This document shows, piece after piece, positions 22,798 to 48,055 of a stretch of DNA of 64,000 nucleotides (position 1 is the stretch's first letter; each line of letters opens with the position of its first letter). The stretch covers positions 116,002,001-116,066,000 of the forward strand of contig OZ296652.1 of assembly GCA_965655095.1 (NCBI GenBank), read 5' to 3'. Under the pieces are notes generated by a model. That model made no database searches. It was not told the origin of the DNA and saw only the letters and a program-made list of their open reading frames with translations. The position numbers and the translations under genes were made by a program. This DNA is from Haplodiscus bocki (taxonomy: Eukaryota).

Positions 22798-23857
22798 ATG
22801 TATGAATTTGACGGGTCTACATTGAAATCTGATATTTGAATTATGGGCCTTATATATTCGCTACAAGGAACAAATTAACTTGAAAGTGTCTGCAAAAGCT
22901 CACAGAGATTCCGTGAAATCACTGCGCGAGATAGTTACCTTCGAATATATTCTGATATTTTAGAGACTACTGATGAAACTGGACGTGCTGAGGGTGATAA
23001 TATGAGATTGTTGAGTTTAGGACTTGTTGTTTCAAATTGTGAGGATAAGATAACTACCAGTAGTGATAAAAAGTTCCAAATAACGGATCATATCCAACGA
23101 GCAGCTTTAATATAAAAACTTTTGAGTACATGCAAGCCAGCGGATGTTTCCGTACAGGATATTGATTCTTCTCTTACCCGAAGAGATCATGAACTTATTG
23201 AAGTTAGAACAAATGAGGGAAGTTTTTTGTTAGACTAGTGTTGAGGGACTTTAAGAATTTCCTGAACATCAAGAATGGGCAATCAATATGTTAGAATTGA
23301 ATATAACTGCAAAATAACTGATTTTGCTCAGGTAAAAATCTCTGCTTATACTGTTGCTCCACAAAACTGCCTTAAATGATAAAAATAGGACTGTTCCGAA
23401 TGAGTTGCTGAATGTCCCGACAAAAGTTGTAGTTGGTTTCCAGTGAGGAGATGATTTGTATGATCGAAATCAAAGTATTGATATTTTTGACAGAGTTCCT
23501 GTGGAGATTGCAAAATGTACCAGAAGATCCAATAAATTTCTTGGCAGTCGACACTGATTAAACTACAGATGACTTTGATCATACTAATGAAGATCTTGTT
23601 CCCTTCTCAAGATACATTTCAAAAGATGACAACCTTGAAATACACATCTCGACATGATGTTATCAATAGATTTCTTTATCCATGCGACGTCACAAAAGGC
23701 CTGTTTCAGCGGTCAAAAAAAGTGGAATTCAAAATCAGAACACGTAAAGAAGATGTTGCAACGGATAACTTTGTTGCTTATATTTTCATTTCATTGAAAA
23801 TTTTATTGTCTTTTAGCTGCGACGGACAACTACACTTTCACTCTAACTGCTTGTAGC
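22798..23857 (+). pseudogene. Major capsid protein 1 (double jelly-roll type), near full-length, decayed
   Basis: YEFDGSTLKSDI, GDNMRLLSLGLVV..ITTSSDKKFQ, NVPTKVVVGFQ, DIFDRVPV and C-terminal SCDGQLHF parallel NSTIKRDF, IRLTNNAFAYCFKEASLGVTSG and ISDGNKL of 59262..60525. Confidence 0.75.
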
Positions 23858-45200: not shown

Positions 45201-48055
45201 AACAATAAACCTATTCTATTTGAGACAAATGCTGAAGAAGAACTGAAGGAGTAACATTTTGCAGAATTGCTAAAGAGAACGGGTAACGGAAGATATAGTA
45301 GACATAATTCTTAAGGAAAACTCTTCGCAGAAAAAATTAAAAGAACTGTTTGTAGTTTATTGCAGGGGCCAGTTTTTAAAAACGGGAGTCCAGTTGGGTT
45401 GATGAACTATCATCACTAGAAAAAAAACAATCGTAGTATCTTGTTCGCAACAGAACTGACAACAATCAAGACTCCAATAACGTTGTTTGAATTAGCAAAA
45501 CAGAAAAAGACACTTTGAGCAACTTTCCAAATAGAAGACGGTTATTGGAAGATGCAGATGTTTCTATGATCAATCCCCAGAAGCAATGCGTTTACTGATG
45601 GATGTACTGTTATTTGGGGTGGAAATCAAAGTGTTGATTTTTTCGATAGAGTTTCTTTTGTAACTAAACAATGTACTAGACGATCCGATTGCCTGGCAGA
45701 GGACACTGACATTATTACAGATAAATTTGATCAAGCATATGGAGATTTTGTTCAACAGTTCAGATGGAATGCAGAAAAAGGCATCCTTAAACATCCATAC
45801 CTCAACATACTAATATTGGCGTTTTCGATACAGTTCTAATAAGTATTACACAAGGTACTAGGTGATCGGATTTCCTGGCAGTGGACACGGCTTAGAGTAC
45901 AAGTCAATTCGATCAGTCATATGGAGTTTTTCTCCCTTTACTGATACGCTGTGACAAAGATGATTTCTTTGACATACAAATCCAAACACGAGGCCAGAAA
46001 AAGTTTTTTAATCCGTAGGGCATCAGAGACAAGCTTGCTTCAGCTCAACCGAGAAAAGTGGGGTTCAAATTTAGATCACATGAAGAGGTTCTTACTGATA
46101 ACTTTGTTGCTTGTTTTGTCAATTCATTACACCTTTCATTGTCTAATACAATACTGCTCTTGGACAACTACAGTTTTATTCAACCTGACCGCCTATTTCC
46201 CCATTGTACACTTTTAATATTTGTAATGATGTTGCATTAAGAAGAGTTTAGAGCAAGGTCTGGTGTTTTTCCACAAAAAAAACATTCAAGAGTAACATTG
46301 CCAAGTGTATATTTATCTTGAAGCTCAATCTATTCAAATTCTTTTTATGAACAGACAGTTGTTACATTCCAAGCGTGGTTTGAATTCTGGTTGCTTCAAA
46401 AACTGCACTTGTCATTTTTTCCTCAGTTGAAGGACAAATTTAATTTGAATAGGTCGTTGATCGCAATGCAAATATTTCTGGTGTCCAAAAAAATTGGTAA
46501 CCGTCTGTCTCGACGTTGAGTTACCGAACACGTTTCTGTTCGGAGAGTAGATTCGTCTCGCATGATTTAAAGAGACTGGTCCCTAGACTGGGAAGAAAAC
46601 CGTTATCAATGTCCATCTGATAGCAAAAAGTTGTTTTTAAGCCGAGAAATCAAGTTTTGTGTTTTTCCAAAATCTTCCACGAAAAAAACACTTCACAAAT
46701 TTTTAAATAGATTTTTAGACTTTGAAGTAGTTTTGAATAAAAAACAAAAAGTTTTGTCTATAAACTAGCGGTATTAAAAACCTGTTCCAAAAAAATAAAC
46801 GTCTAATCTCACTTTATTTCTCAACTTTCTAGAGGTTGTAAAGCATTTTTGACGGGAAAATTTGCCGGAGAAGTTCCGAATATGAGAAGAAAATCTATGG
46901 TACCTGAAAAAATATTTGAAATACTGACAATACTTTGAGTTCAATTTTTTAATACTTAGGATTGAAAGGACAGACCGAAACAATAGAGGGCGTAGATGAT
47001 TTTCAGTTTCCATTTATAATTTTAGTAAAATTTAATCGGAATACAATCACAAAACGGAAGCAGCCAACTGACGAACGTCTTGTTCGATACTATTCTGATC
47101 CCGTCAAAAACTAAACCATGTCTCTTTGAGATAAATGCTCGAGAAGAACTTTAGTAGTTTTTTGAAGATTTGCTAAAGAGAACAGGAAACGGAAGATATA
47201 GTAGAAATAAATCTTAAGGAAAATTCTTGGCAGAAAAAAACAACAGAACTGTTTGTAGTTTACTGAAGGGGCCAGTTTTTAAAAACAGGAGTCCAGGTTG
47301 GGTTGATGAACTATCTTCACTAGAAAAAAAACAAACGTAGTTTGTTGTTCACAACAGGTTTGAGAGCAATCAAGGCTCCAATAACGTTGTTTAAATAACC
47401 ACAAAAAGAGAAAAAGACACTTGGAACAACTTTCAGAAAAGAAGACTTGCAGACTTTCCATGAACAATCAGTAGAAGCCTTGCGTTTTTCATGAATATAC
47501 TGATATGTGTGATGGACGTCAAGGTGTTGATTTTTTCGATAGAGTTTCTTTAGGGACTAAACAATGTACTAGACGATCCGATTGCCTGGCAGTGGACACT
47601 GATTTTATTACAGATAAGTTTAAAAAAGCATATGGAAATTTTGTTCAATAGTTCAGATGGAATGCAGAAAAAGGCATCCTTAAACAACCATACCTCAACA
47701 TACTAGTATTGGTGTTTTCGATACAGTTCTAATAGGTGTGACACAAGGTATTAGATGATCGGATTTCCTGGCAGTGGACACTGATTAGAGTTCAGATGAA
47801 CACGATCAATCATATGGAGATTTTCTCCCTTTACTGATATGCTGTGCCAAAGATGACTTCCTTTACATACAAATCCCGAACACGAAGTCAGAATTAGGTT
47901 TTTTTATCCGTAGAGCATCAGAAACGAACTGGCTTCAGCTCAACCGAGAGAAGTGCGGTTCACGCTTAGATCACATTAAGAGGTTCTTACTGATAACTAT
48001 GTTGCTTGTTTTGTCAGTTAATTAATTCTTTCATTGTCTAATACTTCTCATGGAA

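What the first reader, a model, noticed from the sequence alone, without database searches (positions are those of the whole stretch)
23440..48054. A ~25-kb higher-order satellite built from viral integrase and capsid gene fragments
Seen: 15 diverged monomers (1.3-1.9 kb) in five types, forming HORs of ~6228 and ~9803 bp. By manual translation each monomer is integrase(+), capsid-1 3' end(+) and capsid-2 3' end(-), all pseudogenised and alignable to genes elsewhere in this window. Established: TE-derived satellites exist, and HOR organisation is typical of centromeric alpha satellite. I know of no described HOR array made from Polinton coding sequence. Inference: it is either a virus-derived centromeric/heterochromatic satellite or a host-amplified antiviral sequence bank, a eukaryotic analogue of a spacer archive.
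Basis: partly seen in the sequence, partly recalled or inferred. Interest (0 to 1): 0.9.

Follow-up and report, generated by a model that had tools for sequence, protein, structure and literature searches.

The report
Tandem array carrying a decayed integrase relic
A real tandem array of 1.4-1.9 kb units with a higher-order pattern whose units carry a dead integrase fragment but no detectable capsid sequence; it looks like an ordinary transposon-derived satellite at one locus, later hit by a young Polinton, not an antiviral archive.

Summary
The repeat structure is real. There are 15 monomers plus one partial at 23457-48054, in five types plus one chimera. A 6.2-kb four-monomer unit occurs three times at 96-98% identity. 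The array does not end at 48054. A 17.8-kb Polinton (element C, 48055-65883) interrupts it, and the array resumes for at least 7.3 kb beyond the window.

About 0.5 kb of most monomers is a decayed rve-integrase relic. Intact integrases of related Polintons from the same assembly hit it by tblastn at E down to 3e-12, 28-35% identity; 200 shuffles gave at most 26.9 bits against 57.8 observed. No capsid, protease, polymerase or ATPase similarity was found by any method. The remaining two-thirds of the monomer has no known relative.

The array shares no exact match longer than chance (15-16 nt) with the four resident Polinton sequences examined, which argues against a sequence-bank role. Array-derived ORFs occur in public data only at a homologous locus on a second contig. 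There the array has a different organisation, so turnover is fast and the array looks locus-specific. Centromere function is untestable here. Satellite DNA matching Polinton coding sequence has been reported before.

Verdict: a new member of a known kind, of modest interest.

The parts
23457..48054 (+). Left block of the tandem array: a partial monomer (23457-24289) plus 15 monomers (M1-M15), all head-to-tail in one orientation.
   Evidence: Self-BLAST and reference-monomer BLAST; identity matrix. The same left boundary is present on a second contig (L005 6383).
24290..30503 (+). Higher-order unit, copy 1 (monomer types A, B, C, D).
   Evidence: 96.5-97.4% identical to copies 2 and 3, against 74-86% between neighbouring monomers.
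30504..34083 (+). Chimeric monomer M5 (first ~1 kb is 93.6% type A, the rest is D-like) plus type E monomer M6.
   Evidence: M5+M6 is 88% identical to M14+M15 (30504-33794 vs 44735-48025).
34084..40308 (+). Higher-order unit, copy 2 (A, B, C, D).
40309..46646 (+). Higher-order unit, copy 3 (A, B, C, D).
46647..48054 (+). Type E monomer M15, cut at reference position ~1408 by the Polinton insertion.
   Evidence: Uninterrupted monomers read straight through this point.
25986..26483 (+). Best-preserved integrase relic (in M2), aligned to residues 69-227 of a 285-aa Polinton integrase. It is broken by in-frame stops. Equivalent relics sit at the same monomer position in types A, B, D, E and in M5. 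Type C has lost most of this segment.
   Evidence: tblastn E 3e-12, 30.7% identity over 166 aa. 11 of 15 monomers are detectable, with 0-6 stops inside the aligned stretch. Best of 200 shuffled queries was 26.9 bits against 57.8 observed.
47511..48054 (+). 544 bp of array sequence that recurs in inverted orientation on the far side of element C (window-equivalent 65884-66427).
   Evidence: 98.35% identity, the same as the element's own terminal inverted repeats at 98.05%. The segment is absent from the ends of relatives L003 and L004.
48055..64000 (-). Polinton/Maverick element C. It runs on to window-equivalent 65883, 17,829 bp in all, and is inserted into the array.
   Evidence: The terminal motif beginning AGTAGTGTA is shared with relatives L003 and L004 and is present at both ends. 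Gene content. The array resumes at 66431.
48055..48697 (.). Left terminal inverted repeat of element C (643 bp). It contains a ~315-bp terminal palindrome (48056-48370) and a short-period repeat tract (48379-48509).
48704..52016 (-). Protein-primed family-B DNA polymerase gene of element C. It is broken (at least two frameshifts and one stop) and carries an Endonuclease VII-like motif.
   Evidence: More than 2600 homologues at E<=1e-10, the best 70-88% identical. 87% DNA identity to L003 and L004 over 4 kb.
54156..55009 (-). rve integrase gene of element C, broken (at least one frameshift and one stop relative to the 285-aa relative).
   Evidence: Pfam rve E 3.2e-10. The pieces hit the array colinearly.
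59330..60525 (-). Double-jelly-roll major capsid protein gene of element C, broken (at least one frameshift relative to the 430-432-aa relatives). It has no similarity to the array.
   Evidence: Pfam DJR-like_dom. No array hit.
58852..59259 (-). Candidate adenain-like cysteine protease of element C.
   Evidence: Only the L004 homologue gives a weak Peptidase_C5 match, below the curated cut-off.
62473..63198 (-). A32-like packaging ATPase of element C.
   Evidence: Pfam Pox_A32 E 1.3e-6.

Best explanation
This is a locus-specific, transposon-derived tandem array (a macrosatellite).

Inferred: a roughly 1.9-kb stretch of already non-functional DNA, containing the middle and C-terminal part of an rve integrase gene (most likely from an old Polinton-type element), was duplicated in tandem. 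Unequal crossing-over and gene conversion then expanded and diversified it into five monomer types.

Shown by the identity pattern: a four-monomer block of 6.2 kb was later duplicated twice (2-4% divergence), which gives the higher-order pattern. One monomer (M5) is a recombinant of types A and D.

Shown: at about the same age (terminal repeats 2% diverged) a Polinton of a very abundant resident family inserted into a type E monomer. The array continues on its far side.

Inferred: the array has no sequence-specific function. It evolves by neutral turnover, as the very different array at the homologous locus of a second contig indicates.
For: - Tandem structure, monomer types and higher-order pattern.
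- The array continues beyond element C in the same orientation.
- Integrase relic at the same position in the monomers, E down to 3e-12, with a shuffle control. Colinear weaker hits to the window's own element C.
- No inverted repeats inside monomers, so the monomers are not separate insertions.
- No ORF spans the relic, every detectable copy but one has stops within the aligned stretch, and Pfam is silent.
- The chimeric monomer M5 is 93.6% identical to type A over its first 1 kb.
- True ends of element C, defined by a terminal motif shared with two relatives.
- The second contig has the same unique left flank (94-99% identical over the successive aligned blocks). Its array monomers are only 82-84% identical to the nearest window monomers and are organised differently.
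- Array ORFs have no relatives among 1.84 billion representative proteins apart from gene calls in that second array. Those clusters are confined to that one contig.
- Precedents: a locust satellite homologous to Polinton coding sequence (PMC4935994), and transposon insertions as seeds of satellites (PMC5932611, abstract).
Against: - Two-thirds of the monomer has no identified origin.
- One plus-strand frame over reference-monomer positions ~900-1650 has about half the background density of stops, and a 139-codon open frame survives in type B. A second, unrecognisable relic gene may therefore be present, so a capsid origin too diverged to detect cannot be strictly excluded.
- The integrase relic is only 28-35% identical to Polinton integrases. 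It was not compared with integrases of LTR retrotransposons or other rve elements, so 'Polinton-derived' is an inference. It rests on the dominance of Polintons in this genome and on similarity that runs about 40 residues past the generic catalytic core.
- Neutrality is inferred from the absence of evidence for function. Chromatin, transcription and chromosomal position are unknown.
- The evidence for a single locus rests on sporadic gene calls, and none of the window's own array ORFs are on record.
Confidence: 0.72

Rival explanations
1. The array is a functional centromeric or pericentromeric satellite of its chromosome. The higher-order organisation is maintained by the homogenisation typical of centromeres.
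For: Higher-order pattern with 96-98% identity between units. AT-rich (33-35% GC), gene-free surroundings with transposon insertions. Rapid turnover between the two contigs.
Against: Only three copies of the unit and at least ~32 kb in total are seen. The family was found only at this locus and its counterpart. No chromatin data exist, the host is unidentified and its centromere type is unknown.
Confidence: 0.07
2. The array is a host-amplified sequence bank: a small-RNA source locus that silences Polintons through the integrase fragment, analogous to a piRNA cluster or a spacer archive.
For: All integrase relics lie in one orientation. A Polinton has landed in the array, as transposon traps do.
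Against: Only one fragment type is present, not a collection of invaders. The longest exact match between ~31 kb of array and four Polinton sequences (C, A, L003, L004) is 15-16 nt, equal to shuffled controls, and no 20-mer is shared. DNA similarity to the resident integrase gene is limited to one 56-bp stretch at 77%. One orientation is simply what tandem duplication produces.
Confidence: 0.04
3. The integrase relic comes from a different rve-bearing element (an LTR retrotransposon, a Ginger-type transposon or a domesticated integrase gene), so the array is not virus- or Polinton-derived at all. The amplification mechanism is otherwise the same.
For: Identity to Polinton integrases is only 28-35%. 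Most of the aligned region is the generic catalytic core shared with retroviral integrases. No other Polinton gene is detectable next to it.
Against: Polintons are the overwhelmingly abundant rve carriers sampled from this assembly. The similarity continues to integrase residue ~227, beyond the ~188 reached by solved retroviral cores. No reverse transcriptase, RNase H or LTR signal was found in the monomers.
Confidence: 0.22
4. The higher-order arrangement, or the array itself, is an assembly artefact of a repeat-rich metagenome contig.
For: The source is a metagenome assembly (ENA ERZ26859043, contig ctg88665), and no reads were available to me.
Against: The repeated units differ by 2-4% and the monomer types by 14-26%, so they are distinguishable and not collapsed or duplicated copies. 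An independently assembled contig carries the same flank and an array of the same family. The inverted flank copy next to element C differs from its partner at 9 of 544 positions.
Confidence: 0.05

Closest known systems
Transposon-derived satellite DNA, e.g. LmiSat34-299 of Locusta migratoria, reported as homologous to the coding sequence of a Polinton (PMC4935994), and satellites seeded by tandem transposon insertions (PMC5932611)
   Same: Tandem, head-to-tail amplification of a fragment of a mobile element's coding sequence that no longer codes. Expansion by unequal exchange.
   Different: The monomer here is much longer (1.4-1.9 kb against 299 bp). Only about a third of it is recognisably element-derived. 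The array is known from one locus only. No monomer boundary shows element termini, so there is no sign of a double insertion.
Higher-order-repeat satellites such as primate alpha satellite (own knowledge)
   Same: Diverged neighbouring monomers (74-86%) are grouped in a multi-monomer unit that repeats at much higher identity (96-98%).
   Different: There are three unit copies rather than hundreds to thousands. Monomers are ten times longer and variable in length. There is no evidence of centromere association or genome-wide distribution.
Macrosatellites and long-monomer centromeric satellites derived from retrotransposon sequence, as reported for potato centromeres (own knowledge, not checked here)
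   Same: Kilobase-scale monomers containing decayed mobile-element coding sequence, with fast structural turnover between haplotypes or species.
   Different: The source element here is probably a Polinton rather than an LTR retrotransposon. Function and chromosomal position are unknown.
piRNA clusters / CRISPR spacer archives
   Same: A locus containing dead fragments of a mobile element, with a newer element inserted in it.
   Different: There is one fragment type amplified in tandem, not a catalogue of different invaders. No base-pairing potential against the resident elements examined. No acquisition machinery or repeat-spacer architecture.

Membership tests
Satellite DNA with higher-order repeat organisation | Head-to-tail tandem monomers in one orientation | tested here: met
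   No inverted copies within the array.
Satellite DNA with higher-order repeat organisation | A multi-monomer unit repeats at clearly higher identity than neighbouring monomers show to each other | tested here: met
   96-98% between ABCD units against 74-86% between types.
Satellite DNA with higher-order repeat organisation | Long homogeneous arrays with many unit copies and/or presence at many loci | tested here: inconclusive
   Three unit copies and at least 20 monomers over at least ~32 kb; the right end was not reached. Protein-level and pattern searches found the family only at the homologous locus of one other contig. The source assembly could not be searched at DNA level.
Centromeric satellite | Association with the centromeric histone variant or kinetochore | not testable with these tools
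   No chromatin data, and the host is unidentified.
Polinton/Maverick-derived sequence (the array monomers) | Similarity to the element's rve integrase | tested here: met
   tblastn E 3e-12 to 1e-4 in 11 of 15 monomers, with a shuffle control.
Polinton/Maverick-derived sequence (the array monomers) | Similarity to the double-jelly-roll major or the minor capsid protein | tested here: not met
   No hit at E<=0.01 with the capsid genes of C, L003 or L004. No Pfam DJR hit in the array pieces scanned.
Polinton/Maverick-derived sequence (the array monomers) | Similarity to the protein-primed polymerase, ATPase or protease, or element termini at monomer ends | tested here: not met
   No inverted repeats or terminal motif in the monomers.
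Small-RNA source locus / sequence archive against mobile elements | Fragments of several different invaders | tested here: not met
   Only one recognisable fragment type, the integrase relic.
Small-RNA source locus / sequence archive against mobile elements | Enough sequence identity to resident elements for base-pair targeting | tested here: not met
   Longest exact match 15-16 nt, equal to shuffled controls; no shared 20-mers with four Polinton sequences.
Small-RNA source locus / sequence archive against mobile elements | Production of small RNAs | not testable with these tools
   No expression data.
Polinton/Maverick (element C, 48055-65883) | Protein-primed family-B polymerase, rve integrase, double-jelly-roll capsid protein and A32-like ATPase | tested here: met
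   The family-B polymerase assignment rests on homology to L003/L004 and on a DNA_pol_B_2 hit in element A; Pfam gave element C's own polymerase only an Endonuclease VII-like match. Several of these genes are broken in this copy.
Polinton/Maverick (element C, 48055-65883) | Terminal inverted repeats | tested here: met
   643-bp repeats at 98% identity, with a terminal motif shared with two relatives.
Polinton/Maverick (element C, 48055-65883) | Short direct target-site duplication (6 bp in described Polintons; own knowledge) | tested here: not met
   The two flanks are mirror images (a 544-bp inverted duplicate), not direct repeats.

The most novel reading that the evidence does not exclude
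The array is the functional centromere, or a heterochromatin-nucleating satellite, of a chromosome in an uncharacterised eukaryote. It would be built on a relic of a Polinton integrase gene, and the young Polinton inside it would reflect preferential integration into that chromatin. A separate possibility concerns the mirror-image 544-bp flanks of element C. They might record terminal-repeat extension or fold-back copying of host DNA at a Polinton end, which would be a sequence trace of how such elements are copied or joined.
Probability: 0.07. Interest if true: 0.6.

Novelty: new member of a known kind. Interest (0 to 1): 0.3.

Why it matters
If the main reading is right, this is one more example of a mobile-element fragment turning into a satellite. 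Its use is as a clean case. Two homologous loci show how fast such an array is remodelled. A dated Polinton insertion (2% divergence between its terminal repeats) gives a time mark for the multi-monomer duplications (2-4% divergence). It does not open a new question about antiviral defence. The side observation is the less ordinary part and could be surveyed across the thousands of copies in this genome: a Polinton flanked by mirror-image copies of host DNA, in a family whose termini are ~315-bp palindromes.

Tried and rejected
- **TRF** cannot see the array, because its maximum period is 500.
- **Nucleotide BLAST** of the array against the rest of the window gave nothing.
- **Pfam** found nothing on 94 array pieces or on 81 pieces from 2.4-23.5 kb.
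- **Exact-protein look-ups** of two array ORFs and of one element A ORF found no record.
- **Array derived from element C's terminal repeat: rejected.** I first suspected this because 544 bp of array recurs inverted at the element's far end. Two relatives end exactly at the inner boundary and lack that segment.
- **Monomers as separate element insertions: rejected.** They have no inverted repeats or terminal motifs.
- **Database searches with the longest array ORF** (139 codons) found only array copies on contig ctg86323: the search for homologous proteins and HMMER over 1.84 billion representatives.
- **JGI metagenome scan** with a conserved 32-nt monomer pattern found nothing.
- **Rfam and tRNA scans** found nothing.
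- **Host identification** failed. The assembly accession appears in no held paper, and no host gene was recognisable in the window.
- **Not done:** database searches with the short integrase pieces of the array. Each scores at most 22 bits, too weak for a library of that size. The last homologous-protein search was therefore left unused.
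Full report

Yes for the architecture. A self-comparison of the window and a BLAST of one monomer (30504-32410) against the window show an uninterrupted head-to-tail series from 23457 to 48054. It consists of a partial unit followed by 15 units of 1408-1912 bp.

A pairwise identity matrix sorts them into five types:
- A: M1, M7, M11
- B: M2, M8, M12
- C: M3, M9, M13
- D: M4, M10, M14
- E: M6, M15

M5 is a chimera, 93.6% identical to type A over its first kilobase and D-like afterwards. 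Identity is 94-99% within types and 74-86% between them. The order is ABCD-H-E-ABCD-ABCD-E, where H is the chimera. TRF missed the array because of its 500-bp period limit. GC content is a flat 33-35% across the array, against 23-28% in the flanking Polinton.

**2. The array is larger than reported, and 48054 is an insertion site.**

One exact-protein look-up showed that the window is part of ENA metagenome assembly ERZ26859043, contig ctg88665 (579 kb, about 40x). It also gave the DNA beyond the right end of the window. Three things follow.

- The array resumes at window-equivalent 66431, in the same orientation. It runs to the end of the fetched DNA at 73758, with four to five further monomers that are 72-77% identical to the left ones.
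- What lies between is element C, a Polinton/Maverick on the minus strand. It carries a protein-primed polymerase, an rve integrase, a double-jelly-roll capsid protein, a candidate protease and an A32-like ATPase.
- The true ends of element C are 48055 and 65883 (17,829 bp). Both ends start with a motif beginning AGTAGTGTA. Two relatives from other contigs of the same assembly, L003 and L004, are 87% identical over the polymerase region and lose similarity to element C at exactly that motif.

The family's terminal inverted repeat is 643 bp, and each terminus is itself a ~315-bp palindrome. Uninterrupted monomers read straight through the insertion point.

Element C is a decayed copy. Its polymerase gene has at least two frameshifts and one stop. 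Its integrase has at least one frameshift and one stop relative to the 285-aa relative. Its capsid gene has at least one frameshift relative to the 430-432-aa relatives.

**3. What the monomers contain.**

*Integrase: confirmed.* Against the window's own broken integrase the signal is weak but colinear. Monomer positions ~240-690 on the plus strand match 54504-54938 on the minus strand, with E from 1e-3 to 3e-5. Against the intact integrases of L003 and L004 it is clear. The best hit has E 3e-12, with 30.7% identity over 166 residues (integrase residues 69-227, in M2). Across the monomer types, hits show 28-35% identity over 95-124 residues, always on the plus strand and at the same monomer position.

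Two hundred shuffled queries reached at most 26.9 bits, against 57.8 observed. Eleven of the 15 monomers keep detectable similarity, with 0-6 in-frame stops inside the aligned stretch, and type C has lost most of the segment. The integrase of L004 has its Pfam rve domain at residues 35-125 and aligns to solved retroviral integrase cores over residues 49-188. The relic therefore covers the catalytic core and about 40 residues beyond it.

*Capsid fragments: not found.* The following searches all returned the integrase, or its antisense frames, and nothing else:
- tblastn of all window ORF pieces
- tblastx of nine monomers against the rest of the window at E<=1
- phmmer of 248 ORF pieces against 848 array pieces
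- tblastn of all plus-strand ORFs of L003 and L004, including intact 430-432-aa capsid genes
- the reverse phmmer of 398 array pieces against all Polinton pieces

Pfam found no family in 94 array pieces from both strands at E<=0.1 beyond seven unrelated single-piece chance matches (best E 0.007).

*The rest of the monomer is of unknown origin.* A pooled stop-codon count over 12 representative monomers shows one plus-strand frame with about half the background stop density over reference positions ~900-1650. A 139-codon open frame survives there in type B. That ORF has one relative among 5.8 billion clusters and three among 1.84 billion representatives. All of these are gene calls inside the array on contig ctg86323. 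A second relic gene is possible, but it has no recognisable family.

**4. A homologous locus on a second contig.**

Contig ctg86323 (217 kb, about 60x; locus L005) carries the same unique left flank. Identity is 98.9% and 97.7% over two blocks, and 93.6% across the array boundary. It differs by a 3.2-kb LINE insertion with a 15-bp target duplication, which the window lacks.

Its array starts at the same point but is organised differently. Its monomers are 82-84% identical to the nearest window monomers. Its distal part is a simple 2.08-kb repeat at 96-98% identity, and there is no Polinton in the first 14 kb.

This shows that the array is a real genomic feature that turns over quickly. It also fits element C being a later arrival in the window's lineage.

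**5. Testing the proposed functions.**

*Sequence bank.* The longest exact match between ~31 kb of array and each of four Polinton sequences (C, A, L003, L004) is 15-16 nt. Shuffled arrays give 14-19 nt, and no 20-mer is shared. The only nucleotide-level similarity is one 56-bp stretch at 77% in the integrase gene. The array also holds one fragment type, not a collection. This does not fit a base-pairing archive against the elements sampled. Another Polinton family elsewhere in the genome cannot be excluded.

*Centromere.* This cannot be tested from sequence. The family appears only at this locus and its counterpart, and a conserved 32-nt pattern found nothing in JGI metagenomes. These are weak negatives, because gene calls in arrays are sporadic.

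**6. Most likely history.**

Shown:
- the tandem structure
- the integrase relic
- the recombinant monomer
- the three near-identical four-monomer blocks
- the Polinton insertion
- the divergent homologous array

Inferred: a dead fragment containing part of an rve integrase gene was duplicated in tandem. Polintons are hugely abundant in this genome, with more than 2600 polymerase homologues of which the best 120 listed are 70-88% identical, so the fragment was probably Polinton-type. Unequal exchange and gene conversion then expanded and diversified it. Recent block duplications produced the higher-order pattern. Nothing points to selection on the sequence.

**7. An oddity at the insertion.**

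Element C is flanked by mirror-image copies of 544 bp of array (47511-48054, and 65884-66427 inverted). These copies are 98.35% identical, the same as the element's own terminal repeats at 98.05%. The left junction is a seamless monomer. On the right, the inverted copy abuts a monomer at reference position ~600. There is no direct target-site duplication.

The relatives lack this segment, so it is not part of the family's terminal repeat. An inference only: at or soon after integration, a strand ending in the right terminal repeat paired with the left repeat and copied outward into the left flank, then rejoined the array. Capture of flank into both ends of a linear copy is an alternative.

**8. 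Comparison with what is known.**

Satellites derived from mobile elements are well documented, and a locust satellite homologous to Polinton coding sequence has been reported (PMC4935994; PMC5932611). The present array differs in monomer length, in having a small higher-order structure and in being local. It is a new member of a known kind.

Noticed in passing
window 47511-48054 and window-equivalent 65884-66427 (L002 7332-7875): Element C is flanked by mirror-image copies of 544 bp of array sequence, 98.35% identical (the same as its own terminal repeats), and has no direct target-site duplication. Two relatives lack the segment. This suggests fold-back or template-switch copying of the flank at or soon after integration.
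   Followed up: partly
window 48056-48370; window-equivalent 65580-65883; L004 14040-14357: The termini of this Polinton family are ~315-bp palindromes (each end is its own reverse complement at ~75-79%). The outermost bases begin AGTAGTGTA and are conserved in three copies.
   Followed up: partly
window 48704-52016 (-): The polymerase of element C has more than 2600 homologues at E<=1e-10. The best 120 are 70-88% identical and all come from ENA, on many long contigs. This Polinton family is extremely abundant in the source organism, or organisms. The N-terminal part carries an Endonuclease VII-like motif (Pfam PF02945).
   Followed up: partly
window 60-2440 (+), possibly to ~4440: A second Polinton-like element (A) lies at the left edge. 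It has a broken protein-primed polymerase gene (Pfam DNA_pol_B_2) and no nucleotide similarity to element C. A 68-bp palindrome at 4376-4443 sits where GC content rises. Elements A and C face each other across the 44-kb interval.
   Followed up: no
L005 698-3872: The homologous locus on contig ctg86323 carries a LINE (endonuclease plus reverse transcriptase, 1038-aa ORF) with a 15-bp target duplication, which the window lacks at 20828-20842. This is an insertion polymorphism between the two contigs.
   Followed up: partly
window 14213-14900: An unrelated 127-bp tandem repeat, 5.5 copies at 74% matches.
   Followed up: no
window 30504-32410: Monomer M5 is a recombinant. Its first ~1 kb is 93.6% identical to type A monomers and the remainder is D-like (83-87%). 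This is a footprint of unequal exchange or gene conversion between types.
   Followed up: yes
array, reference-monomer positions ~900-1650 (e.g. window 31404-32154, + strand): One plus-strand frame has 1.5-3.8 stops per 100 codons against ~5.5 elsewhere, pooled over 12 monomers. A ~120-bp sub-repeat (positions ~890-1013 and ~1075-1195) lies in the same region. It may be a relic ORF with no known relatives.
   Followed up: partly
window 48379-48509: A short-period repeat tract (periods 9-33, TTG/TCG-rich) lies inside the terminal inverted repeat of element C. It accounts for the length differences between the two repeats.
   Followed up: no
window 4000-12700: A stretch of 38-46% GC, much higher than its surroundings, with no recognisable protein domain in any frame. 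Its nature is unknown. The masked N run at 12748-12879 was left alone.
   Followed up: no
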